Source: Polymyxa betae A26-41 (Eukaryota > Protista > Endomyxa: Phytomyxea). Taken from it: a DNA stretch of 64,000 nt. Below the pieces are notes generated by a model. That model worked only from the letters and a program-made list of their open reading frames with translations. It was not told the DNA's origin and searched no databases. This document shows positions 8,842 through 39,571 of this stretch, in pieces. The number at the start of each line of letters is the position of its first letter. Position 1 is the stretch's first letter. The stretch lies in NCBI GenBank assembly GCA_003693705.1, contig RBZT01000751.1, positions 62,001-126,000 on the forward strand. Direction: 5' to 3'. A program made the translations under genes and the position numbers.

Positions 8842-8948
8842 AATATCGGTCTTTGTTTTCATATTCACTGTATACAAAGGAAGCCATAAGATTTCCAGTC
8901 CTATGCAATCGATCTGGCTGTCTCTGTATTTATAATATATACTAAATC

Positions 8949-11826
8949 TTAAATCAGATGGTTCGTCGACATTCTCGTTTGCTCGGCACGACTTATTTTT
9001 GCCATGGCTTCCTCCTCCAGTTTTTGATGAATGGCCCTATGGCGACAGCAATTAGCTAGATTGTCATTAGAAGAAAAAACAATTGGGCTTACAGAAGTAA
9101 TAACTCTATACGAGCCATGGATCCAGCCGATGTGATCAGTGTATAATTCTGGATAAGAATCGGTGCGAAGCAGATCTTGAGTACTAAAGGAATCAGGACG
9201 GCGCATAATTCTAAGTTGCCGCCGGTGGCAATTAAGAATATCGTCAGGCCGAACATCAATGTGTCGACCAGCACAATGGAGTGCATGATCGTCAACAAAC
9301 CCTCAGCGCCTGGCGAACCCCACCACCGGAAACTGTTTTCGAGATCATCTCCGTTCGCCTGTTCTAGCTTGGAGCCTCCAAATGATGCTATTAATCGATA
9401 GGTATAGAGATGCCTTTTGTGAGCGACTTTCGATTGCTGCAGCTCGCTCTCCGAGGCCTGCCGTATGTGCTCTCTTAATGAGGTCGATCGTCTTCGGTCT
9501 AGTTCACGCTTTCTGGCAATCTCTTCAGCTGGCTTTTTTAAACTTTTCCTGACCGATTGTCTGAAACCGTGATGACCATCCTGATGTGCACTCCCTCTTC
9601 TCGAAGGACTGTCGCTTTTTGAATCCATTATCGAGTGAGGATCGTCAAAGCGATTCGCGCTTGGACTTTCCTCTCTGCGGCTTCCAGAATACGACACCGA
9701 GTTCTCATGGTCTGACGTCACACTCATCCGTCTCTGAAGCCCCTTTTCATTATGTCCAGACGAACGGCTGTGATTGGCAGGATTCGCTGCAGATAGAGAT
9801 AGGCTTAATCGACGTGGACTTGATGCTGGAAGCTGCGGTTGGCTTCCTTGTCGTCCCATTTCGTGGGTCGACGAGTGTGAAGCGATCGGTTGACTGCCAC
9901 GTCTCGGCCCAGAATCGCTGGTCAAAGCTTGCGACGGCAGGGTAACGGGGCCCTGTCCTTCCGCTGCTGATTGCACCGGAAGATGGGCAAGACCGTCATA
10001 GGAGCGTCGGGGAGTCAATCGTTGATCTGGTAGGGACCCCTGCCTTGGAGAATTAGTCGAAAGTGATGGCTGATTAAGTCGCCGGGACGTATTAGTCTCG
10101 GAAGCCAGCCTAGGTCCATTTGCATCCGTTATCAGCGCTTGCTGTATTGGGTTCAGTCTTTTAGATCCGGATCCATCTAGACCCAGATTTGCAGGGTTTT
10201 GGTTGACAAGCGTCGTGCGAGAATCATGTGAAGAATAGGGACTGTGCGGCTGCTCCTTCAATATATCTCCAACCTTTTTCTCTTCGGATTCTGGGGTAGG
10301 TTTGCCGAGATGCCACGGCGTCAGTTTAGCATGATACTGTTTACTCACATTACGGCGGATAACTGAGAGTCTGGCAGCGATGCGTAATGAAACCTTTCGA
10401 AACTGAGCCAATGGATATCCGGCACCTCCAAGTTGAGTCTGAGATTCGTGGAGAGCCAATCCATGTTCTTCAACTGAATTCAGAGAAGCTTTCCTGTTAG
10501 TCATAGGTCCGCTCTGCCTCGTATAAAAATCCTCAGATCTTATCGTAGTGCCTTCGTCTCCAATGGTGTTAGATTCTGGAGCGGTTTGATTTGATTTATA
10601 TTTATGCTTAGTCACCGCTAACTGTGTAAACTAAAGACATCGTTAAACAATCGTGTTTCAATCTTGAGTGCAGCTTACTTTAGCAGCTGCCATTTTCACA
10701 AGGTCTTCTCTTCGTCTTTCTCGTAATGCTTTATGTTGAATCCAAGCATCCACCACATTCTGCGACATCCGTTCACGCTTAGGAGAACTATTTCCTGCCT
10801 TAAACGCCATCATCGTCAGATGCTGAAATGTGTTTGCACTTATGTACTTACTTTGCCCACAAAGTCTTGGTCAGTGTCGATGACTATCTTAGGTGAATCG
10901 GTATCGTGGGCTTGCTGGATCTCGTGCAAGCCGAATCTGTTCACTCTGTCTTGAAAATCATGTAGATTCTTCCTGGTGAATTTACGGCTGTCAATCAGGA
11001 AATCATGGCACATATTCATTATTCGTGAATTGACGTGATAGACATAGAGAAACGATAAAAGTTCCCAGGCAACTGCAGAATAAAACCCGACGTTGGAATT
11101 CAGATCAAGAAAGCGGACGCGAGCCCAGCGTGCCATGACCATAGCCACAACAACAACCCCAGCAGTGAGACGAATTTCTGTTAATTGCAAACACACTTCG
11201 TAAATGGCAAGACGAAGATAGCGGACGTAGGAGAAGTCGCTGGATGATTCCTCAGTATCACTAACGAATTGCATGAAGAATACTTCACGATACATCAGCC
11301 ATGCCAGTTTACGCCTGGCGTACTTAATCTGCAGAGAACGGAACATTACTCTAATTACAGGAAACGCCACGTCCACTGGGATGGATTCCAACATATTGAG
11401 CATATCTGTGACACCTGAATGAATCGTCTGATCATCCCATCTTTTCAACGTGCTGACTACAATTTTTAATGTGCCCATAATCGTAGTACACATGCCCATA
11501 TAGAGCATAATCCCCATTAGAAAAAGGATATGCAAACTGTGAAGCGAATCGTTCAGCTGGTTACCATTCTCAAATCCAATGCCGCTTGAGATATTTGTAA
11601 TAACCGAGCTGGATTCAATCAGAGAAAGAAACATGGAGATCATGGCAGCCACAGAAAGCTCTCGATAGACGTTTTGTAGAAGCTCCATATGTTCAGGACG
11701 CCCTTTCAGTAAGTCTTCTACTTTGGAGCGAAATAACCCAAATATAACTGAAATAACCAACATGATGATGCGAACAACGGCGGCAAGGTCCGGTTCCTGA
11801 ACATCGTCATCGATAGAGAGGGACAT
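8949..11826 (-). CDS. MLO-like multi-pass membrane protein A, at least 4 exons
   Basis: ordered MLO-like motifs ELLQNVYRELSVAAMISMFL, SLHSLHILF, LKRWD, WLMYREVFF, FSYVRYLRLAI, RWWGSPG..LLTIMH, NYTLITSAGSM. Confidence 0.72.
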
Positions 11827-12403
11827 GTCTACCTAGAGCGAATGACGTACACGTTTGCCTGCATAGTAAATGACATAGTGTGCCGGTTTAAATGGGTCAT
11901 TTCCTGCACTATTTCAGGTAGATGCTCAGCACTGCAAAATTTGGCATAAAAGCAATAACGCGACGACGGAAACCAGACAAGGAATCTGCAGTAGATATAT
12001 CCCATGAACACAGTAGTCTGAGTAGTCAGTAGTGTCAGCAATTATAAAATGAAACCAAACGTCTGTAACGAAACTGACACTTGTACACAAGTGCGCAATG
12101 TTTGCAGTTAATAATAAGTGGCGCTGTTTGCTAAAATCAAGGCGCTGTTGCCTGTTTGCTAAATCAGGCTTGATCTCCTGAAAAATTCAAAAAATTCTGT
12201 CATGGCTTCACAACTGCACCTTAGCGACTTGTCCGCGATTCAGAACTTTGCCGAATTTCGATAGCGCTAATCAAGATTCAAGAAGGCAAAACGACGAAGT
12301 TCGAAATCAAATTTGGTGTTGACGACTCCGTTTAAATTTGTGCATCATTTGGGTACGATTGGTACGCCGCCCTTAGAGGTTTTCATTCTGACAGTACACG
12401 ATC

Positions 12404-14670
12404 ATGGACGATCTTGAGGTGAAATTGATGCCGGGTTTTCCGATAGGCTAGGCAATAGATGCAAATGGACTCCCTTGGCACTGAGGTTGATGAACCAGAT
12501 TTAACAGCCGTTATCCGAATTGGATTACTGACAGTGGCCATCATCTTAGCCTTCATTCAAAAAAGAATTGAAAGTGTGTTAAAAAAACGCCCCGAGCATA
12601 TGGAGCTTTTAGAAAATTTATATCGAGAGCTGTCAACTGGTGCTTTAATATCAATGACATTGTATCTGATAGAGAGCAGCAACATTGTCTCCAGATACAG
12701 CACTGATGTGGAGGAATCGCTAGAGAATCTTCATAAGGTATTCTCGATAGGAATTATTATCTACATGATGATGTGTGCCACAATTATGATGCTCCTTAAA
12801 ATTGTCATTACCTTCTGGAAGGGCTGGGATTTGAAAACCATTCAATCTGAAGTAAATGAACTGACGACACTGCTGAACCTGCATCCTAACAACAGATTTC
12901 GAATTTGGATAACTCGGATAAGACTCGCCTGGCTGATGTACCGCGAAATTTTTCTGATGCATTTCGTTGTCAATGGAGAAAACGACAATCCTAGCGGCAG
13001 TTTTGCATACGTTAGGTATCTGAGGATGGCAATATACGAAGTCAGTCTGCAGTTAACCGATATTCGAGCTACTGCAGCTATTGTGATCCTGTTCATCATC
13101 GCTTTCAGATGGGCCCGAGTTCGATTGCTGTATTTGATAGCCGACGCTGGAACATTTGGGGCGATCATATGGGAGTTTGGCAGCCTTTTGTATATGATTC
13201 ATGTCAATCATCGATTGAGTTTTATCAATTGCAATTTTATGATCGACACCAATCGATTCACAAAAGAAAACCTCTCTGCGTTCCAAGTAAAGGTCCAACA
13301 ATTCGAGCTGAAAGAAGTTGTCCAAGCTCACGATACTGAACGACACCGGATTGTTATCGATCCGCCAGGTGCTTACCAGACCCGTCAGCAGATAATAACT
13401 ACTATACATGAAGTAATTCAGTCACCAGCAACAAGATACCTTTTTGACCGGTGGCTTAGTACAAAACAAAGTCGACCTTGGCGAAAAACAAGCGCGTGAT
13501 GCCGGTCACCGATCTATCAGCCAAAACTGACATGATAGTTCGCAAGGCAGCCTTAAAGGTTTAATTTTTATACCGAGCAGTTTCGTATGCTGAAGCGCTG
13601 GGACAGTTCAGAAAACGACGCCGCTCTCTGGTGAAAAAATGGAATCTGGTGAAAGTCGGGAGGGTTGCCCTAATTCACTTAGTAAAGCATTACCCATTCC
13701 TCAGACTTCGAGAGTGAGTGCCCATTAGAGAATTCATTGCGCTTATTGATCGTCGTCTGTTAGTTGCTGAGTTCTTACCAGAGCTCATCCAAGAGCTCAT
13801 CGTCTAGGAGCGGCGAGGAGCCTTACGATGAGCACAAACCGCTGAAGAATTTCGAACAGCCGAAGCTGCCACTTTGTGTCGTCGCTCGGCTGGCTGTGCT
13901 CCGAAGCCAAGCAAAGAAACGAAGGGGCAGGCAAAAACCTTCGCCAAGGGATCATTCCTCAGCCGCAGAATCGAATATCAGGCAACAATCTTTGCCACCA
14001 CATCGTTCTTCGGCAGGAGAATCAAAGGGATCAAGTCGCGATAGTAGTCAACAAGGATATCGGAACAGCCCCAGACGCAGCTTGAAGAAATCAGAGGAGC
14101 GCACTATGATTCACGAGCTGGAGCAGAAAAGGATGATGTCACTGAAAGAAAGAATGGATAGCGATAGTATGTCGCTGAAATCAGTAAGAAGGAGTTCTGC
14201 TGCAACTACCAGATCTTCCCACTACACAATGGAGCTAATATCTTCATTTGGTGGTGCAAAACTTGAACATGGGCGATCAACAGACTTGGTCAACGCTCTG
14301 AAATGGTGGGCCTGTCCCGGTCCAAATGGGCTTTTGGCTATTTTGCATGAGATTATCATTGTCGACTCTATTGCAGCTGGCGTGGTGCTTTATCTTTTTA
14401 TAACAGCTCCTACTGCAAGTTTGCTGATTATTGCTGTTCCAATTGCCGCAAAATTTCTACTCGCTCCGTTACTGTTGCAGTATTTCACAATGGCAACGTC
14501 TTCAGGACCACTAGCACGTGTCGAGCTTATTGTCTTGTACGTTCTCACAATGGTTAAAAAAAATCATTGATATCCAGTTTAGGGCAATCCATCAAAAACT
14601 GGAGGAAGACGCCATCGTTAACTTCGCTGAAGATGCAACAAGGAATGAAGCTGCAACTGTACGTTCCTAA
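12404..14670 (+). CDS. MLO-like multi-pass membrane protein B, multi-exon, paralog of A
   Basis: ELLENLYRELSTGALISMTL, SLENLHKVF, WKGWD, WLMYREIFL, FAYVRYLRMAI, KWWACPG..LLAILH, YFTMATSSGPL; shares final intron and AIHQKLEE tail with A. Confidence 0.72.
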
Positions 14671-14964
14671 TTATATACCTTAGAGCTTGGCACAAGTAGT
14701 GTCGGAGTACCAAACAAGAATGTATATAAAGCCTTAAATTGCATATTCCGATGATATCGTCAACTTGGCAGTAGGCACTGATCGAAATTCCGATTTATTC
14801 ACGATGCAGCTCGCCAGTGGCAAAACCCGATTACGGAATTTTCGAGTTTCAGGTCCGGGTCGTCGGTAAATTAATGACAGAAATTGCGAGCCTGACTTGT
14901 CTATCAGCGACCCTGATCGCTGGAGATTTCTGACCTTTAGTGGCCAGATCTATTTTCTGTCACT

Positions 14965-15435
14965 ATGGGTCGCTGCAAGTTAAAAATCGAACAGATCAAG
15001 GATTCCAAGAAGCGGGCAACCTGCTTCCGTAAGCGGGCCCAAGGTCTTTTAAAGAAAGTAGAAGAGCTTTCGATTCTTTGCAATTGCCAGCTGGCACTTG
15101 TCATTGTAAGTGAGAACAAAACCGTCGTGTCGTTCTCCACCGGTGAAGTTGACTCCATTCTCAATGAAGCAAGACGGATTCATTCCATGAACGAAATGTA
15201 TAATAACCCGTCGCCTGTCGTCGCCTCAGAATGCCGACCAGAGCATATCGCTCCGCCGTATATGCCCCAGTACTACGACGGCTTAGGCATGATGGGATCA
15301 GAGGAAGTCAGGAACGAAGCGCCCTCTGGCGCTATCCCAGCCATTCCTATCAACGACATTGACTTTACACCAAGGCAACCAGATTCATTACCGCCTGCCC
15401 AGCTGCAAATGCCCTATCCATTCTCGTCTTTGTGA
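14965..15435 (+). CDS. MADS-box transcription factor, MEF2/type II-like, intronless
   Basis: MGRCKLKIEQIKDSKKRATCFRKRAQGLLKKVEELSILCNCQLALVIVS at the extreme N-terminus. Confidence 0.92.
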   Translation: MGRCKLKIEQIKDSKKRATCFRKRAQGLLKKVEELSILCNCQLALVIVSENKTVVSFSTGEVDSILNEARRIHSMNEMYNNPSPVVASECRPEHIAPPYMPQYYDGLGMMGSEEVRNEAPSGAIPAIPINDIDFTPRQPDSLPPAQLQMPYPFSSL

Positions 15436-31441: not shown

Positions 31442-33538
31442 ATGTCGGAGCACGAAGTGAACGCCGATCTGGCGGCCGGAGGCGGCATCGCCTGCCTTCT
31501 CGCCGTAATCCTGATTGGTGGAATTCGGGACGCCTTAGAACGAGGCCTGCATCGCTATCCCGAACTAATCGAGCTGCTGCATGCGTTGTACCGCGATCTG
31601 GCCGTCGCTGTCTTCGCCGTTATGATCATCTCGCTTATTCAAGTCCTTCAACCTTCCATCACCATCTTCTTGGTCGCCGTCTTATCATACGTCGCTTTAG
31701 TGCTGATTATGGTAACCATGCTTCAAACGATCGTAGTTCGAACGTGGCATCGTTGGGATCGGGAAGCACTTCGTGCTGCCATTTCCGATTTGCAGAACTG
31801 TTTGCATAAGGAGACGATGTTCGGTTCTCGAACGCTGGCGACATCCAAGGCAAAGGTCGCCTGGCTCATGTGCCGCGAGATCTTCATCATGCAGTTCATC
31901 TCGGGGAATAGCGAGCTATCCGGCTTCTCGTATGTTCGATATCTTCGTCTGTCACTATCCGACGTCTGCCTTTCGTTCCTTCCTATGGGTCCGTCAGCCT
32001 GCATCGTCATCGCCGCCGGCATCGCAGCCGCCTGGGGCCAGACAAGCCTTGTGAATGGCTCGGAGATATATCTGTTGTTAATCTGGGAGGTCATCTCCCT
32101 TTTGTATCTGATTCATACCTTAAGGCATCTATCCTATATTCTCACCCGATTCTTGATTGACCCAAATCGTTTCACTTCTTCGCAACTGGCTGCATTTTTA
32201 AGCCTTGGACAGGGTCAAGAAGACAACGAGCCCGAGCAGGAGGCGACTCGTCGTAACTCGGCCCCGTTGCCTTTATTTCGAAAGGTTTACCATCAGAATT
32301 CGCATTTCATACGATTTATAACAAATTGGGCAGCTCAGCGATAAGCTTCGAAAACCGCCACATGCAGTCGTGTCGATTTCACAGCCGGACGAAGGCATCA
32401 TGAAAAGCGTTTCGGAGATGGATCCAGATAATCCTACCATCTCGGATTTCTCAAAGAACGCAGCTCTGCCTCGCGATAGCGCTCTGATGTCGACGACTAG
32501 GCTATCGGGCACGCCACGCCCCCATTACGCCCCATCAGAGCCCTCCCATCGAATATCTACTTTGACTGAAAACGAACAGTCGACAAGACGCCCTTATGTC
32601 TCGAACACCGATTATTCGGCCACATACAGACAGCATAATTCTCGTAATGGCAGCATTGTTCGTGGAATACTGGTCTTCCTTGTTGTCATACTGACTCCCT
32701 ATGTGCAGACACCGAGGCCGGTGACGGAATTGTCGTTAGGACGGTCGCATGGAAGAGGTTCGATGAGCGCCTACAGCGTTATGGTAAGATAGGTTCAATA
32801 GCGACTATCTAAACACACGGCTGACTGGTGACCCCAACAGACCCCACGGGCCCGCCTATCAACAACTTCCATGGTGGGTTACATTACATAAACTTGCTCT
32901 CATACTGATGATCAGCTTCAGAATAGTCAGATGCCTCGTACCATACGAATGAGGACGGAGCCAGAAGTTGATCCTAATGGAAAGTTGTCGTTTCGTGTGG
33001 CCGTAAAGCTTATGCTGCTTCGCAAGAGGGCGACGAGCTACGCCCAGGCCAGCATTCTTGACCCGCAGAGTTCTGGCAGCGGGAGGTCGCAATCCCACGA
33101 TTCGATGGAAGCTGCAACCGATCTGGTTCGGATGTTCGGCGGATCAGAAGCTGCCCAAGCTATGTCTGCAGAGCTTCCTGGTAGCCTGCGGTGGTGGGCG
33201 TCACCAGGACCGTCCGCCATATTGAAGGCAACGCACTCCAATCTGGCTCTTGATGCCATTGTACTGGCTGCCACTGCATTAACCCATCCCTTGGATGTGT
33301 ACGGGATCGTGTTTTTACTCGTAGCCATCGTGACGTTCATCAAACTGTATATCACTGCGTTGCTGTTGAGGGATTTTACCATCGTAACCTCTTCAGGATC
33401 AATGGCGCGCGTGGAATTAATGTCTCTGTAAGACCGCCCGCGCTTGTTGATCTGGCTATTTATTGATGGCGCTGTTGCAGATCGAGTAGAAAGCTTGCTG
33501 AGTATGAGCGTGGGTTGAAGTACAATTCAGTCACATAA
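31442..33538 (+). CDS. MLO-like multi-pass membrane protein C, multi-exon, more divergent paralog
   Basis: ELLHALYRDLAVAVFAVMII, WHRWD, WLMCREIFIMQF, FSYVRYLRLSL, RWWASPG..ILKATH, DFTIVTSSGSMARVEL; same phase-2 final intron as A and B. Confidence 0.7.
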
Positions 33539-33663: not shown

Positions 33664-36600
33664 TTAGATTGTCAAAACCGCCATGATTATTGTTACGAAG
33701 ACGGCGATGAAGACAGACGAGGACGAAGCACTGTTTGCTTTGCCTCTTAAGATGCCGACACCGGAGACGTTGTACCGAGCCAGATCGTTTCTGGAGTAGT
33801 TGCCGTTGTTGGACAAAGACGAAGCGTCGTATTTCTTATCGGTGGCAGTTGCATTCGAAACGGCCTTGCCTTTGCCTTTGGAGAGGAGTTTGCCCTCAGC
33901 ATTAAAATCGTTGCCACGGCTTCTGACGTATTCCTTGCCTTGAACGCTTACGTACTCATTGCTGTTTACGTAATCCTTGCCTTGAGCGCTTACGAACACA
34001 TTGCTGTTTACGTATTCCTTGCCTTGGATGCTTACATAACCGTTGGCGTTCTCAATTCCTTGAACGTTGACGTAGTTGTTGCTTTCAAGCTCATAAACAT
34101 CATAGTCCAGAACGTATTTGCGCTGTGCACAGGCGTAGTTGATAGCGAGACGGAAATCATCGCCAGCACATGGAGAGCCGAAGTACTCACGGTCCGCAGC
34201 AACATCACACGATGCTTTGCCCAAACATTTAGGTGCGATCTTGCTCAGGACGTCCATGTGGCACTGGGCGTTCGATCGCCACAGTTGAGTGTCGTAACAT
34301 GAACCATGTGGTCGGCCGAACGACGTCGACAAGACCGAGACGATAACTGCTCCATCGTCACAGCCAAGAGTCTGGTTGCGTTCACGAGATTGACATTCAA
34401 AGCACATCTTGCTAGGTTTAGCTTCCTTGATAAGGGGCAGCTCGTGACGAACTTTCTTGACAGCTGTAGAGCCAGCATTGACAACCTTCACAACTTTGTC
34501 GCTAGATGAGCCTGTGACCTTCAAAGAGGTTTTCTTGGAAGGAGACGATATCATCACATCCTGCTCGTTAACTTCAACAGAGGTCACCTTAGGAGCCTGC
34601 TCGTTAACTTCAACAGAGGCCATCTTAGGAGCCTGCTCGTTAACATCAACAGTGGTCATCTTAGGAGCCTGCTCGTTAACATCAACAGTGGTCATCTTAG
34701 AAGACGAGATCGCCCTGTCCTTGTTAAAGGACGATGGCGTCAGAAGCTGAACCTTGAAAGACACCGGAGAGCGGACAACAGAGTTCAACTGCGACGAGGA
34801 CGTCGCCAAAGAGGGCCAGACTGGCTGGCCAATAACAGGTTCGGTAACGTTACAGTCCTCAGGCTTGATCAGGGGAGTGGTCAAAAATGGGCTGTTTAAG
34901 GTCCCTGATTTGGGAGCAACCGAGCTGGAAGTAGGCGCCGGCGTAGCGATAGGGCTGATTGGAGCCACACTTGATGACGTCGGTGCTGGAGTGATGCTGA
35001 TTGGCTGAACAGTCTTGTTGGTTGGAACCGGAGTGACAGTGACTGGTTTAACAGTGCTGTTGGCGCTCGGGTAGGTAGTCGTCTTGTTCGATACATTGAG
35101 TTTCAACGTGATGTTGACAATGGTCGAGTTGAGTATCTTGCTGAGGTTGCTGAGTGGCGACAATGTCGAGTTCAGCGGTGCTGTTGTCGAGATATTGGCA
35201 GGCATTGTCGTACTGACATTGACAATTGGATCAGTGACGTTAACAGGACGAGAAACGTTCATTGGAGCCGGCGAGATTGGAGCTACCGATTGGAAGGTAG
35301 GATACGGGCTGGGAGCCGATGTGACGTTAGTGCTGTTCATGGGGCTTCCAACAGGAGCAGTAGTCGGTGCTGCTGACGGGTAGGTACTTGGCGCCGAAGT
35401 TGCGTTCGTTGCGTTCGGAGCTCCGGTGGGATGAAGACTATCCCATCGAGGGGTCGAAGCAAAAGAGGTCGGCGCAGCTGTGTTACGTGGAGCCGAAGTA
35501 GCATTCACAGGAGGCAAGCTCGGTTCTGAGGTGACGTTGGCAACCGGGGCAGAAGATGGCGCTGTAGTTGCGGAAACCGGGGCAGCTGACGAGCCGTTGT
35601 TCAGCGGCTGCGTCGTGAATGACGTTTTAGGGCTGCTAGTAGGCGCTGTGGTTGATTCAAAAGGAATCGAACCGTTGCTGAGCGGCATGGTCGTGTAATG
35701 AGGGCTCTGCACCGGCATCGTGGTTACAAAAGCAGGAGCAGCCGTCGAGCCATTGTTGTTCGGCTGCGAGGTCATAGGCGGCGCTGTGGTCGGCATGTGG
35801 CAGCGGTATTGTACAGTCTGGACGTTGACGTTGCTTAGGTCACAAACCTGCTTGTTGTGGCAAAGGTTGCGGACATAGGGCAGATTGCTGCTGGCATTGA
35901 CAATGTCAACGTAGCCGTACTGGCAGATGAGTTTCTCCGGCGGCGTCGAGTTGGCGATCGGAGCGGCAGTAAAGACCGGCGAGGTAGAAGCCGGAGCCGT
36001 TGTCATGATCGGGGTCGAAGTAGCTGGGGCCACAGTTGAGCCATTGCTGGCAGGGACGGTAGTCGCTGGAGCCACTGTTGAGGCATTGCTGATCGGGACG
36101 GTAGTCGCTGGAGCCACCGTTGAAGCATTGCTGACCGGGACGGTAGTAGCTGGAGCCACCGTTGAGCCATTGCTGATCGGGGCTGTAGTCGCTGGAGCCA
36201 CCGTTGAAGCATTGCTGACCGGGACGGTAGTAGCTGGAGCAACCGTTGAGCCATTGCTGATCTGGGCTGTAGTCGCTGGAGCAACCGTTGAGCCATTGCT
36301 GATCGGAACGGTAGTAGCGGGAGCCACCGTTGAGCCGTTGTTGACCGGGGCGGTAGTCGCAGGAGCCAACGTTGAACCTGGTAACGTCGGGAACGAAACA
36401 TTTCCAGCCGGGGCTGTGGTCGGCATTTCACAGCGGTATTGGACCATATCGACAGACACTGTGGTCAGATCACAGGCCCGCTTGTAGAGACAGGCCTCAC
36501 GAACAAACGCGAGATTGCTGCTGGCGTTGACGATGTTGATGTATCCATACTGGCAGACGATCTTCTCAGGGAACGACACGTTGGCTGACGGGGCGACAGT

Positions 36601-39571
36601 CGGCGTGGTGCAGCAATATTCGACCATGTCGACAGGCATCGCAGACAGATCACAGGCCTGCTTGTAGTGGCAGGCCTCACGAACAAACGCCACATTGCTG
36701 CTGGCGTTGATGATGTCAATGTAGCCGTGTTGGCAGACGATCTTCTCAGGGAATGACACGCTCGATGATGGGGCTATGCTCGGCATGGTGCAGCGGTACT
36801 GGACGAGATCGACAGGCATCGTAGCCAGATCACAGGCCTGTTTGTAGTGGCAGGTCTCACGAACAAACGCCAGATGGCTGCTGGCGTTGACAATGTCAAT
36901 GTAGCCGTACTGGCAGGTGATCTTCTCCGGGAACGACAGGTTGGCGCGCGGAGCGATCGTCAGGACCGGACCGGGCAGCGAACCAGGCCAGGTCAACGGC
37001 GCGGACATGTTGGAGACGTTGTGGGAATACAGCGATCGAACACGGGGAGCCGTCGTAGCCGAAACCGGGGCCACCGTTGATGTGTTAACAACAGGAGCAA
37101 AGGTTGGCGCCTCGGTCACGTTCTCAGGAGCCGAAGTTACGTTTACTGCAGCCAATGTGGTTTCGTTCACCGGCAACGAATGAGCTGGTGCTACAGACGA
37201 TGCATTGGTTGAAGGAGTCGGCACGCTGGTCAGCATCGTCGATGTGGCATTTGGAGCGACCGTGGTCGGGAACTCCAACGGGAACGAGCTTGCAGCATGA
37301 TGAGCGTACAATTTTGGTACTGTTGCTGAAAGTAAATAAGCCACGCGGGAAAGAAATCGAATACGGGAGTCACATACTAGGAGCTGCAGTGGCCGGGAAC
37401 TCCAGAGATGCTGAGTTGTTACCAGCGGAGTGGTGAGCGTACAAATTCGGCATCATGGCTGTGATCAAACCAAGTCAATCAGAAGGCCCAGAAAAAGGCA
37501 TCCCCATACTCGCAGGCGCAACTGTTGGGAATTCCAACGAAACGGAATTGCCGACAGCTGAGTGATGACCATAGATGTTCGGCACTACTGTCGGCACATG
37601 CGCTGAGAATCAAGAAGTTAATTGAAACAGTAAAAAAAAAATCAAAATACTGGCAGGTGCAACAGCGTACAAGTTTGGTGCTGTAGAAGAAACGAAAGTA
37701 AAACGCAAAACCCAGATTGTGACAAAAACGTAACTTACTCAATGACACATTCGCGACGGTCACGTTCGGTTTCGGTTGCTCAGTGACGTTGTGTTTGACA
37801 GCGAACTTCTTCTTTTTTGGGAAAGAAATTTCGCCGCGGTGGTGATGTCGGTTCTTGATCTCGATCGGGCGACGACTCGTCTTCACAGCAGGAGCTGTTG
37901 TCAAGTTGACGGGCGAAGCAGTAACATTGGCAACTATTAATGACAGAGTCAGAAGATGCCTCGAAAAAGATACTGTGAAAAACCGCCAGTAACTCAAAAT
38001 AGCAAAAACGCTCTAGCAGCGGTTAAAGCATGGAAAGGCTTTCTGAATCCGAAAACAGCGAGCAAATATTCAATAAAAGTTGTGGAAATTAAAAAGAAGA
38101 TCTTACCGCTGACTGAAGCGTTACTGACGGTCGGGAATTGAATCGGCGATGGGGCTCGAGTCGGGTACTCGAAAACAACCTCCTGAACGACCGGAATCGG
38201 GGCCGGTGCAGTGGTCGGTGCAGTTGTCAAAGGTTCGATGATCTCAGGCACCTCAATCATGTCCGTGTGGTCGGGCATGATGTACTGCGGCATCATGAGC
38301 GGAGCTTGAGGCATGAGAGGAGCCTGAGGCATGAGGAACTCAGGCACCATGACTTGAGGAGCAGGAGCCGAAGTTGCAGGAGCGGACGTCAGCTGGTTGG
38401 AATAAACATCCGGGAATGCTGGCCATTGGATGTTGTCCAACATATCGGACGAGGGCGCTGGGGTCTGACTGGATGGCGCCGGGGTGGCTGACGAGCTTGA
38501 AGGCGAGCTCGTAGCATTCGGCGATGACGTCGGCGCAGTCGATGGCGAACCTTGCGACGAAGGAGCGTTGGGCGGAGCGGCCGTCAGCTGAGTCGACGGT
38601 GATGGGCTGGAAGTGAAAGGCGCCGACGGTTCAGTGCTGGTGGCAGGGCTTCCAGAAGAAGGTGTTGACGATTCGGTGCTGCCGGCAGGACCAGTAGTCA
38701 TCATCGGCGCCATTGTAGCAGGCGAGTATGACGACGTCGTCGAAGGCATGGTAATGTATGGCATGCTTTGCGGCGACATTGTCGAAGGCGTGCTTGGAGC
38801 CTGGGTCATTGGCGACGGCGTAGCGGCACCATTTGCTGGTACATAGGCCGTCTGTCCGTTAGGCAAGATGCTGGGGACTAGAGGCTGGCCATTCGGTCCA
38901 ACAGGCATCATCGGCTGCCCATTCACCGACGGGAACATTCCCAGGAATCCGTTCGGTCCATAGACGGGGAGAAGCGGAGTCGTGGTCGGCGCTTCCGACG
39001 TCGGCGCCGTCGTGGTCGGAGACGGCGTCGCTGGACTCGTAGTCGACGCCTCGGAGGCGCTCGCTCCTGGCACAGGAGTGGTAATGACAACTTGCGCAAC
39101 AGAAGTGAGCTTGGATTCGGGCGATGGAGTTACATCTTCCTCCTCTTCTTCTGGGGCCGTGGGGTGGTGCTTAGGCTTCTTGGCCTTCTTGTGTTTAGAG
39201 TGGTGTTTCTTCTTGGGTTTTCGCTCGTGATCGTACAGGCCCGCGGACGGTTCGACCTCGGTTCCATACAATCCCTGGTCGCCGTTTCGCAGGCTGTACG
39301 GCTGCGGGTCGGCGAAATGGAATTCAGGGGGATTCTGGAATTCGGGCGCCAGCGTCGCCAACGGTGGCAATATTGCAGGGGTTGGCGCTGGGGTTGGCGC
39401 CGGGGTCGGGGCCGGGGTGGGTGCTGGGGTAGGCGCTGGGGTTGGCTTCTCACCATAGACCGGGAGAATCATGGGAACCTCGTTCTTCGCCTGAGCACCT
39501 TCTGGGCGTTGAGCTTCGCCACCAAGCGCGAGCACGCAGATGGCGACAAAGTGGATTAAATAGAAACGCAT
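33664..39571 (-). CDS. ~1831-aa secreted, predicted GPI-anchored mucin-like protein with a SUEL (Gal/rhamnose lectin) domain; 5 exons 39571-38107, 37933-37739, 37602-37510, 37458-37378, 37325-33664
   Basis: signal peptide MRFYLIHFVAICVLALGGEA; GT-AG joins keep the frame (all phase 1); SUEL motif LGCDDG..SFGRPHGSC..C..KCLGKASC..FGSPC..INYAC; hydrophobic C-terminus after NSASSSS. Confidence 0.85.
34560..34700 (-). repeat. coding 36-bp tandem repeat (about KMTTVDVNEQAP x4)
   Basis: repeated CCTGCTCGTTAAxxTCAACAG core on the + strand. Confidence 0.85.
35790..36935 (-). repeat. coding repeats: three 180-bp Cys-rich units plus a fourth separated copy, flanking ~8 copies of a 42-bp (14-aa) N(G/A)STVAPATTxPxS unit
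   Basis: direct periodicity visible in both DNA and translation. Confidence 0.9.

What the first reader, a model, noticed from the sequence alone, without database searches (positions are those of the whole stretch)
8949..14670. Divergent MLO-like channel family in a non-plant protist, with a giant loop before the last two helices
Seen: two head-to-head paralogs here and a third at 31442-33538 share an ordered motif series. Established: plant MLO proteins (powdery-mildew susceptibility factors, Ca2+-permeable channels) carry ALEKIKxELMLLGFISLLL, LHQLHIFIF, WxxWE, YxxLRxGFI, FDFHKYIxRS, FWFxRPxxxLxLIHF and LYALVTQMGS. These align in order with ELLQNVYRELSVAAMISMFL, LHSLHILF, LKRWD, WLMYREVFF, FSYVRYLRLA, RWWGSPG..LLTIMH and NYTLITSAGS. 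Unusual: a few hundred residues of Ser/Arg-rich low-complexity sequence lie between the fifth helix and the WW motif, the plant Cys-rich first extracellular loop is missing, and the C-tail is very short. Inference: a lineage-specific expanded MLO subfamily with different regulation. MLO-like genes are known sporadically outside plants, so any novelty lies in this architecture and expansion.
Basis: partly seen in the sequence, partly recalled or inferred. Interest (0 to 1): 0.85.

Follow-up and report, generated by a model that had tools for sequence, protein, structure and literature searches.

The report
Divergent MLO-like membrane protein gene trio
Three neighbouring genes of the beet-root parasite Polymyxa betae encode very divergent relatives of the plant MLO seven-helix (calcium-channel) proteins, each with a 300-535-residue disordered cytoplasmic loop; this is real, but it adds only modestly to a family already known in protists.

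Summary

**The genes.** Three paralogs are the only copies in this 27-Mb genome, which matches the Polymyxa betae draft. A lies at 11826-8949 (-), B at 12459-14670 (+) and C at 31442-33538 (+). Each has a 5-helix N-domain, a Ser/Arg-rich loop and a 2-helix C-domain. All three give open GT-AG gene models of 906, 671 and 620 codons.

**Evidence for MLO homology.**
- Pfam Mlo does not hit the window's exons directly.
- A profile of the N-domains searched against 1.84 billion proteins finds only 20 proteins. These are subfamily members and MLO-like proteins, seven of which pass Pfam Mlo's own cut-off.
- hhalign against those MLO-like proteins gives 99.8% for the N-domain. The C-domain, which played no part in selecting them, gives 95.6% at the collinear place.
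- A language-model search puts both A and B nearest to Mlo clusters.
- No other membrane family matches.

**Relatives.** The closest relative is an uncharacterised 822-aa Plasmodiophora brassicae protein with the same architecture. Its AlphaFold model has a confident 7-helix core and a disordered loop.

**What is and is not unusual.** MLO-like proteins in Rhizaria, without the plant cysteines or calmodulin site, were already described (Kusch 2016). Only the giant loop and the Pfam-invisible phytomyxid subfamily are new.

**Limits.** Channel function is inferred, and expression is untested.

The parts
10852..11826 (-). Gene A exon 1: N-terminal MLO-like domain (helices 1-5), 325 codons
   Evidence: Open frame. 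Aligns with B, C and MLO-like proteins. Atlas feature search gives an Mlo cluster first, 0.95.
10679..10798 (-). Gene A exon 2, 40 codons, basic. Flanked by a 53-nt and a 48-nt GT-AG intron.
   Evidence: It ends with the same V-K/R-x-A-A-x-K motif and phase-0 donor as B exon 2. P. brassicae has an intron at the corresponding point (P0001 versus P0021).
9093..10630 (-). Gene A exon 3: about 440 codons of Ser/Arg-rich loop, then the WW-x-x-PG motif and helices 6-7
   Evidence: C-domain profile hits P. brassicae P0021 at E 8e-19. hhalign to MLO-like helices 6-7 gives 95.6%. 8 RRxS/T sites against 1.2 expected.
8949..9036 (-). Gene A last exon (28 codons plus stop), reached by a 56-nt phase-2 intron
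   Evidence: Its first residues (A-I-H-Q-K-L-E-E) are conserved with the last exon of B (E 1.5e-4).
11827..12458 (.). 632-nt intergenic region shared by the divergently oriented genes A and B
   Evidence: No long ORF. Promoter function not tested.
12459..13412 (+). Gene B exon 1: N-terminal MLO-like domain (helices 1-5), 318 codons
   Evidence: Hit directly by the Spongospora MLO-like protein P0009 at E 6.5e-8. Atlas gives an Mlo cluster first, 0.95.
13460..13558 (+). Gene B exon 2 (33 codons)
   Evidence: 47-nt GTAATT...TTAG intron before it. Ends like A exon 2.
13612..13713 (+). Gene B exon 3 (34 codons, loop)
   Evidence: Among the candidate acceptors checked by hand on the sequence, only the one giving an exon start at 13612 keeps the frame between the 13559 and 13714 donors. 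Model only; no RNA support.
13764..14536 (+). Gene B exon 4: loop (about 185 codons) plus WW motif and helices 6-7
   Evidence: (aligns with A exon 3, E 5e-44).
14583..14670 (+). Gene B last exon (88 nt, the same length and phase as in A)
31442..32284 (+). Gene C exon 1: N-terminal MLO-like domain, 281 codons
32334..32783 (+). Gene C exon 2: loop, 150 codons. Contains a 17-residue hydrophobic stretch of unknown meaning.
   Evidence: Model only.
32916..33427 (+). Gene C exon 3: end of loop, WW motif, helices 6-7. The acceptor could also be at 32922 or 32931; all three are in frame.
   Evidence: (E 5e-19 to A exon 3).
33481..33538 (+). Gene C last exon (58 nt), after a 53-nt phase-2 intron at the same position as in A and B

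Best explanation
A, B and C are intact paralogous genes of Polymyxa betae. They encode a strongly diverged, phytomyxid-restricted subfamily of the eukaryotic MLO seven-transmembrane family.

Shown:
- Homology to MLO over both the helix 1-5 block and the helix 6-7 block.
- A 7-helix core in the orthologue's model.
- A 310-535-residue disordered Ser/Arg-rich insertion in the third cytoplasmic loop.
- A lineage-specific triplication.

Inferred:
- Like plant MLOs, they assemble into Ca2+-permeable cation channels, with helix 2 lining the pore.
- The giant cytoplasmic loop is the regulatory module, through phosphorylation and/or partner binding. It would stand in for the calmodulin-binding C-tail of plant MLOs, which is absent here.

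My confidence in the homology is about 0.93. My confidence in channel function is about 0.45. The figure below is for the whole statement read as 'MLO-family members, probably functional genes'.
For: - The N-domain profile against 1.84e9 representatives gives only 20 hits. They are 6 subfamily members or fragments plus 14 more distant hits. 13 of those 14 hit Pfam Mlo as best or only family, and 7 pass its gathering score: P0006, P0007, P0009, P0012, P0014, P0018, P0019.
- The matched regions overlap and are collinear.
- hhalign of subfamily against MLO-like proteins: N-domain 99.8%, E 1.5e-27. The C-domain gives 95.6%, E 1.3e-8, at template columns 357-447, after the N-domain's 12-279. The C-domain played no part in picking the MLO-like set.
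- P0009 (UniRef 'MLO-like protein', Spongospora) hits gene B at E 6.5e-8 and gene A at 2e-4 in the own-genome search.
- The P. brassicae orthologue P0021 (822 aa, one annotated protein spanning both domains) has a sub-threshold Pfam Mlo hit exactly on the FWF-x-x-P / helix-6 motif, E 0.0023.
- Atlas feature search: best cluster Mlo, 0.95, 217-220 of 256 features, 26 of 30 hits in the Mlo set, for both B and A.
- AlphaFold2 of P0021 with a 34-row alignment: helices 1-5 and 6-7 at pLDDT 85-94, loop 416-690 below 50, pTM 0.59.
- Tree: the subfamily is monophyletic (100/99). A, B and C form a clade (100/97) sister to P. brassicae.
- All three genes have open GT-AG models with 46-56-nt introns (one of 132 nt) and a shared phase-2 last intron.
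- Plant MLOs as Ca2+-permeable channels with a helix-2-lined trimeric pore: abstracts of PMC13418360 and PMC12630461 seen, and bioRxiv 10.64898/2026.04.10.716904.
Against: - No exon of the window hits Pfam Mlo even at E<=10. The whole genome gives no PF03094 hit in six-frame search.
- No solved MLO structure exists to compare with, and the fold searches were uninformative.
- No expression evidence: four RNA runs laid zero reads on the locus, which is no test.
- The middle exons of B and C are models without RNA support.
- C's loop contains a hydrophobic 17-mer that would upset the topology if it spans the membrane.
- The plant-defining cysteines and calmodulin site are absent.
- The MLO-like comparison set was itself selected by similarity to the N-domain, so the 99.8% for that domain is partly circular. 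The Pfam scores of that set and the C-domain test are not circular.
- Channel activity has been shown only for land-plant MLOs.
Confidence: 0.78

Rival explanations
1. They are true MLO homologues but do not conduct ions. They would act as scaffolds or receptors in polarised secretion or membrane trafficking, with the long disordered loop recruiting partners.
For: [quoted passage not shown] A long disordered Ser/Arg loop is typical of hub or scaffold regions. The conserved plant features that couple gating (disulfides, calmodulin-binding site) are missing.
Against: The most conserved positions of the subfamily are in the helices and juxtamembrane motifs shared with MLO, including the acidic residues before and in helix 2. 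In the same genome another MLO-like gene is fused to a voltage-sensor domain, which argues for an electrical or ion-flux role of the family in this lineage.
Confidence: 0.3
2. One or more of the three copies (most likely B or C) is a decaying or silent duplicate rather than a working gene.
For: No RNA support. C is the most diverged copy, with branch length 1.61. It has lost several otherwise invariant residues, has a 132-nt intron unlike the others, and has an odd hydrophobic stretch in its loop. B needs two weak donors (GTAATT, GTTTAA). A B-like copy in another organism (L014) carries in-frame stops and frameshifts.
Against: All exon models are open over 620-906 codons, with the conserved motifs kept in both domains. 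A GTTTA-type donor recurs in both B and C, so it may be normal here. L014 is a single short Logan contig of unknown quality.
Confidence: 0.15
3. The N-terminal 5-helix part and the C-terminal 2-helix part are separate genes, so there is no giant loop.
For: Stops separate the ORFs in the raw sequence. Prokaryote-style gene callers split the P. brassicae and environmental relatives into two proteins (P0001/P0022; P0004 followed by a 751-aa ORF).
Against: The same order, strand and spacing occur in all three paralogs. Short GT-AG introns restore one frame. The P. brassicae record P0021 carries three NCBI accessions (CEP03287.1, SPQ95523.1, XXQ32570.1), each giving one 822-aa protein. MLO-like transcripts from Spongospora and Rhodelphis carry both parts in one ORF. 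In the AF2 model helices 6-7 are as confidently modelled (pLDDT 85-93) as helices 1-5, and pTM is 0.59.
Confidence: 0.04
4. It is an orphan membrane family whose resemblance to MLO is chance or hydrophobic-composition bias.
For: No direct Pfam hit. Transmembrane proteins can give spurious profile matches.
Against: E-values of 2e-10 and 8e-9 in a 1.84e9-protein library to proteins that pass Pfam Mlo. Collinear matches of two separate domains. The conserved positions are polar or aromatic motif residues, not just hydrophobic runs. No distant hit has a family other than Mlo above its Pfam cut-off.
Confidence: 0.02

Closest known systems
Land-plant MLO proteins (Pfam PF03094; barley Mlo, Arabidopsis MLO2/NORTIA)
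   Same: Seven helices in a 5+2 arrangement around the third cytoplasmic loop. The motif series is collinear: the E-L-x-x-x-G/A-x-x-S helix 2; the H-x-x-x-F helix 3 followed by W; the R-x-x-F and F-x-F/Y-x-x-Y-L/I-R segment before helix 4; the F/W-W-x-x-x-P motif entering helix 6; and the T-x-x-G motif after helix 7.
   Different: Below Pfam's threshold. No Cys-rich first extracellular loop and none of the four conserved cysteines. Third cytoplasmic loop of 310-535 residues, against several tens in plants (plant figure from my own knowledge). C-tail of about 30-40 residues, acidic, with no recognisable calmodulin-binding helix. The FWF motif has changed to R/K-W-W.
Protist MLO-like proteins (Kusch et al. 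2016, PMC4824068), such as Spongospora subterranea A0A0H5R9K4 (P0009), Rhodelphis P0006, Cavostelium P0007, Chrysophaeum P0014
   Same: The same core. They also lack the plant cysteines and calmodulin site, and have variable loops and added domains. Kusch already lists Plasmodiophora brassicae (Rhizaria) as having an MLO-like protein.
   Different: Those proteins pass Pfam Mlo and have loops of about 60-125 residues between helices 5 and 6. The window's subfamily forms a separate, well-supported clade. It is found only in Polymyxa, Plasmodiophora and a few environmental contigs.
Plasmodiophora brassicae PBRA_003047 / CEP03287.1 (P0021), annotated 'uncharacterized protein'
   Same: Orthologue-level relative. 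It is 25-32% identical to the window's N-domain exons and 27-34% to their C-domain exons in the joint alignment. The N-domain profile hits its cluster at E 3.7e-48 and the C-domain profile hits it at E 8e-19. Same architecture, with a loop of about 345 residues. Same intron position after the short basic segment.
   Different: Single copy in the searches made here, against three in P. betae. Keeps the canonical F-W-F-G-N-P motif and a slightly longer tail.

Membership tests
Mlo (Pfam PF03094) | Sequence scores above the Pfam gathering threshold (24 bits) | tested here: not met
   No hit at E<=10 for any large exon of A or B. No hit in six-frame search of the genome (its control genomes gave no hits either). 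The P. brassicae orthologue reaches only 16.8 bits. The exons were scanned separately; a joined protein was not scanned.
Mlo (Pfam PF03094) | Significant profile-level homology to proteins that do pass the Pfam threshold, over the same regions | tested here: met
   (E 2e-10 to P0006, 8e-9 to P0007; both pass Mlo at 38.7 and 46.1 bits). (99.8%). (95.6%, independent C-domain). (pairwise E 6.5e-8).
Mlo (Pfam PF03094) | Seven transmembrane helices in the order 1-5, cytoplasmic loop 3, 6-7 | tested here: met
   Hydropathy of the exons and of P0021. Alignment. AF2 model of the orthologue with a confident helical core. N-out / C-in orientation was not tested.
Land-plant MLO | Four invariant extracellular cysteines (three in loop 1, one in loop 3) | tested here: not met
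   The loop between helices 2 and 3 is 9-30 residues with no Cys in A, B or C. Kusch 2016 reports the same for most non-plant MLO-like proteins.
Land-plant MLO | Calmodulin-binding amphipathic helix in the proximal C-tail | tested here: inconclusive
   The tail is about 30-40 residues and net acidic in A and B. No predictor or binding test was run. Kusch 2016 finds the site absent or highly diversified outside land plants.
MLO ion channel (functional class) | Ca2+-permeable conductance; trimeric helix-2-lined pore | not testable with these tools
   Needs electrophysiology or Ca2+ imaging, and multimer modelling. Only single-chain AF2 was available.

The most novel reading that the evidence does not exclude
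The giant Ser/Arg-rich third cytoplasmic loop is a phosphorylation-controlled gating or plug module. In paralog A it carries eight RRxS/T sites. It would replace calmodulin-tail regulation and so define a new regulatory mode of MLO channels. That mode would have evolved in obligate intracellular plant parasites, and the three paralogs would be tuned to different life stages (zoospore, plasmodium, resting spore).
Probability: 0.15. Interest if true: 0.55.

Novelty: new variant of a known kind. Interest (0 to 1): 0.35.

Why it matters
MLO proteins are best known as plant susceptibility factors and, more recently, as Ca2+-permeable channels. Their minimal functional core and their regulation are still debated, and no experimental structure turned up in the PDB searches made here.

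This subfamily keeps the helical core but drops the plant cysteines and the calmodulin tail, and it inserts 300-500 disordered residues into loop 3. That makes it a natural test of which parts of MLO are needed for conductance.

It also shows that current Pfam annotation misses part of the family. The P. brassicae orthologue is still labelled 'uncharacterized'.

P. betae is the vector of beet rhizomania virus, and P. brassicae causes clubroot. Parasite-side Ca2+ channels are therefore of some applied interest. None of this resolves a long-standing question, so the interest is moderate.

Tried and rejected
1. RNA evidence. The look-up of sequencing runs listed 19 RNA runs only by species label. 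The four I laid (X10, X13, X15, X19) put zero reads on 8900-14700.
2. The search for homologous proteins, three searches. These found nothing, self only, and eight protist MLO-like proteins. No plant MLO was retrieved, so no tool-derived plant sequence could be aligned. Residue correspondences to barley Mlo are therefore not claimed as tested.
3. AF2 of gene B exon 1 with a 3-row alignment: pLDDT 46, unusable.
4. Atlas shape search with the 822-residue model: TM 0.11-0.18, noise caused by the disordered loop.
5. Foldseek against PDB: nothing below E 1.
6. VIA wide search: best Z 7.2 to generic helical bundles, within noise for helical models.
7. Profile against PDB sequences: nothing.
8. A conserved amphipathic helix after helix 5 (D-A-W-I-Q in A, D-R-W-L-S in B, T-N-W-A-A in C). 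I rejected this. In the frame-consistent models the B and C segments are intronic.
9. Basophilic-kinase site enrichment as a family trait. I rejected this. RRxS/T is enriched only in A's loop (8 against 1.2 expected), not in B, C or P. brassicae.
Exons were searched by reference one at a time, and the full-length fold used the natural P. brassicae protein.


Full report
**Organism and setting.** The window is C592:62001-126000 of a genome of 27,085,814 bases in 1001 contigs. The window's GC content is mostly 42-49% in 2-kb bins. The only published assembly that fits is the Polymyxa betae draft: 1,001 contigs, 27,085,946 bp, GC 45.1% (PMC6328671). The closest protein relative comes from Plasmodiophora brassicae, which agrees with a plasmodiophorid (Phytomyxea, Rhizaria). 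The announcement passages read mention no gene annotation. That would explain why no protein database returned the window's own proteins.

**Observation.**
- ORF listing shows the same layout three times: a 300-346-codon ORF with hydrophobic helices, a gap with stops, and one or two ORFs ending in two more helices.
- A six-frame search of the whole genome with B's first ORF finds exactly these three places and no others.
- N-domains are 49% (A/B) and 32% (C/B) identical, with 67 invariant columns. C-domains are 38% and 32% identical.
- A and B are divergently oriented, 632 nt apart.
- The stretch between helix 5 and the WW motif is Ser 15-23% and Arg 9-12%, with net positive charge.

**Gene models.** No RNA data could be obtained, so I derived the models from frame consistency, GT-AG ends and paralog comparison.

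| Gene | Exons | Codons |
|---|---|---|
| A | 11826-10852, 10798-10679, 10630-9093, 9036-8949 | 906 |
| B | 12459-13412, 13460-13558, 13612-13713, 13764-14536, 14583-14670 | 671 |
| C | 31442-32284, 32334-32783, 32916-33427, 33481-33538 | 620 |

- Introns are 46-56 nt, except one of 132 nt in C.
- All three genes share a phase-2 intron right after the A-R-V/I-E-L segment. A and B then have an 88-nt last exon beginning A-I-H-Q-K-L-E-E.
- A exon 2 and B exon 2 end with the same short motif and phase. P. brassicae has an intron at the equivalent point: P0001 reads through it and P0021 splices it.
- The middle exons of B and C rest on weak donors (GTAATT, GTTTAA, GTTTAC) and remain models.

**Is it MLO?**

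Direct test:
- Pfam hmmscan of the four large exons of A and B gives no Mlo hit even at E<=10.
- The genome-wide PF03094 search is empty. Its control genomes were empty too, so that search says little.

Indirect tests:
- An HMM of the three N-domains, run by HMMER against 1.84 billion representative proteins, finds only 20 proteins. Six are subfamily members or fragments (P0001-P0005, P0008). The other 14 are more distant.
- 13 of those 14 hit Pfam Mlo as best or only family. P0011 is the exception, with only a weak Ion_trans hit. Seven exceed the 24-bit gathering score: P0006 at 38.7, P0007 at 46.1, P0009 at 27.4, P0012 at 25.0, P0014 at 37.3, P0018 at 24.7 and P0019 at 37.0 bits.
- Their sources span Rhodelphis, the amoebozoan Cavostelium, the stramenopile Chrysophaeum and the plasmodiophorid Spongospora, the last named 'MLO-like protein' by UniRef.
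- In the joint alignment, the window's motifs sit in the same columns as the Pfam-matched segments of those proteins. For example, P0006 195-255 corresponds to Mlo 235-296, P0007 16-73 to Mlo 12-69, and P0021 694-726 to Mlo 346-378.
- hhalign of the subfamily N-domain against the MLO-like set gives 99.8%, E 1.5e-27 over 250 columns.
- That set was chosen by N-domain similarity, so the cleaner test is the C-domain, which played no part in the choice. It gives 95.6%, E 1.3e-8, at template columns 357-447, downstream of the N-domain match.
- P0009 used as a plain protein query against the genome hits gene B at E 6.5e-8 and gene A at 2e-4.
- An orthogonal method (protein-language-model features in the ESM Atlas) gives an Mlo-bearing cluster as best hit at 0.95, with 217 and 220 of 256 shared features, and 26 of 30 neighbours in the Mlo set, for B and A respectively. 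The tool's 'recognition' values (1651 and 1744) are below its 2300 mark, so I count this as supporting evidence only.
- No other family appears anywhere.

**Structure.**
- A 3-row alignment gave an unusable model.
- The natural full-length orthologue P0021 was then folded with a 34-row alignment that included the window's exons as separate rows. It gives pLDDT 85-94 for residues about 80-400 and 700-780, below 50 for 416-690, and pTM 0.59.
- The model has seven long membrane helices plus cytoplasmic helices, with helices 6-7 as confidently modelled as the first five.
- Searches of this model against the ESM Atlas, against PDB by Foldseek and against PDB by VIA-align returned only noise.
- The PDB sequence searches made here (phmmer with the MLO-like protein P0007, and the subfamily N-domain profile) returned no MLO chain.
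- So structure neither adds to nor subtracts from the family assignment. It does show that the two halves belong together and that the loop is disordered.

**Evolution.**
- A maximum-likelihood tree of N-domains splits the subfamily (A, B, C, P. brassicae P0021, environmental P0002 and P0004) from other MLO-like proteins with 100/99 support.
- It joins A, B and C (100/97) as sister to P0021 (93/94). This means a triplication on the Polymyxa side.
- The environmental relative P0004 is followed on its contig by a 751-codon ORF on the same strand after 135 nt. The long loop is therefore probably subfamily-wide.
- P. betae also has more canonical MLO-like genes on contigs C806 and C539.

**What is unusual and what is not.** Kusch et al. 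2016 (PMC4824068) already report the following:
- MLO-like proteins in green and red algae, alveolates, stramenopiles including oomycetes, Amoebozoa, Apusozoa and 'the Rhizaria species Plasmodiophora brassicae'.
- 'Highly diverse membrane topologies'.
- Few or none of the plant cysteines.
- A calmodulin-binding site that is absent or highly diversified.

The missing Cys loop and the short tail are thus expected. Three things remain specific:
- A clade so diverged that Pfam misses it. Its P. brassicae member is still 'uncharacterized'.
- A third cytoplasmic loop of 310-535 residues, against about 60-125 in the MLO-like proteins compared here.
- The local triplication.

**Mechanism.**
- Shown: homology, the 7-helix core, the disordered basic Ser-rich loop on the cytoplasmic side of helices 5/6 by analogy with MLO topology, and conserved acidic residues before and in helix 2.
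[quoted passage not shown] AF3/MD modelling proposes a trimer with a helix-2-lined pore and a cytosolic acidic ring (bioRxiv 10.64898/2026.04.10.716904).
- Inferred: the Polymyxa proteins form similar cation-conducting oligomers, and the loop is the regulatory element.
- Paralog A's loop has eight RRxS/T sites against 1.2 expected (P<0.0005 by shuffling). B, C and P. brassicae show no such excess. Phospho-regulation is therefore a hypothesis for A, not a family property.
- My mapping of the window's invariant Glu residues onto barley E35/E55 rests on a sequence recalled from memory. It is a lead only.

**Verdict.** This is a new, divergent variant of a known family, in a lineage where the family was already recorded. 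Interest is moderate.

Noticed in passing
G000:C806:27538-30316 (loci L004-L013); protein P0009 residues 480-660: The more canonical MLO-like gene of plasmodiophorids carries a C-terminal four-helix extension. This is Spongospora P0009, with a 54-72% identical orthologue in this genome. The extension matches voltage-sensor domains of Cav, Nav, NavMs and Ci-VSP in PDB (phmmer E 1.7e-5 to 1e-3), and P0011 gives Pfam Ion_trans at E 0.01. It is an MLO/voltage-sensor fusion. The scan's earlier notes flag the same thing. No paper holding both 'MLO-like' and 'voltage sensor' was found.
   Followed up: partly
window 33664-37344 (-): A 1226-codon ORF next to gene C. It has a Ser/Thr/Pro/Ala-rich body with about five repeats of a Cys-containing module, one clear SUEL-type galactose/rhamnose-binding lectin domain (Pfam E 1e-15, residues 993-1072) and a hydrophobic C-terminus. 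It accounts for the GC-rich, GC-skewed block at 34-40 kb.
   Followed up: partly
window 14965-15435 (+): MADS-box (SRF-TF) transcription factor gene immediately downstream of gene B (Pfam E 4e-17).
   Followed up: partly
window about 32600-32660 (+), gene C exon 2: A 17-residue hydrophobic stretch (G-I-L-V-F-L-V-V-I-L-T core) lies inside the otherwise polar loop of paralog C. If it spans the membrane it would invert helices 6-7. It may instead mark a mis-modelled exon.
   Followed up: no
window 9340-10500 (-), gene A exon 3: Eight RRxS/T motifs in A's loop against 1.2 expected by shuffling. There is no excess in B, C or the P. brassicae orthologue.
   Followed up: yes
window 13559 and 32285: Two modelled introns use GTTTA donors (GTTTAA, GTTTAC), and others use GTAATT or GTACGT. 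Modelled introns are 46-56 nt. Donor usage in this organism may be looser than GTAAGT.
   Followed up: no
L014:90-1091 (Logan contig of run DRR591303): A B-like N-domain from another organism. It is 46% identical in protein overall and 66% identical in DNA over 470 nt. It is interrupted by in-frame stops and frameshifts. It is either a pseudogene or a poor contig.
   Followed up: partly
ENA contigs of samples ERZ23498364 and ERZ27279858 (no DNA served): The same two environmental samples hold at least two subfamily members (P0004, P0008). P0004 is followed by a 751-codon ORF on the same strand after 135 nt, which suggests an even longer loop.
   Followed up: partly
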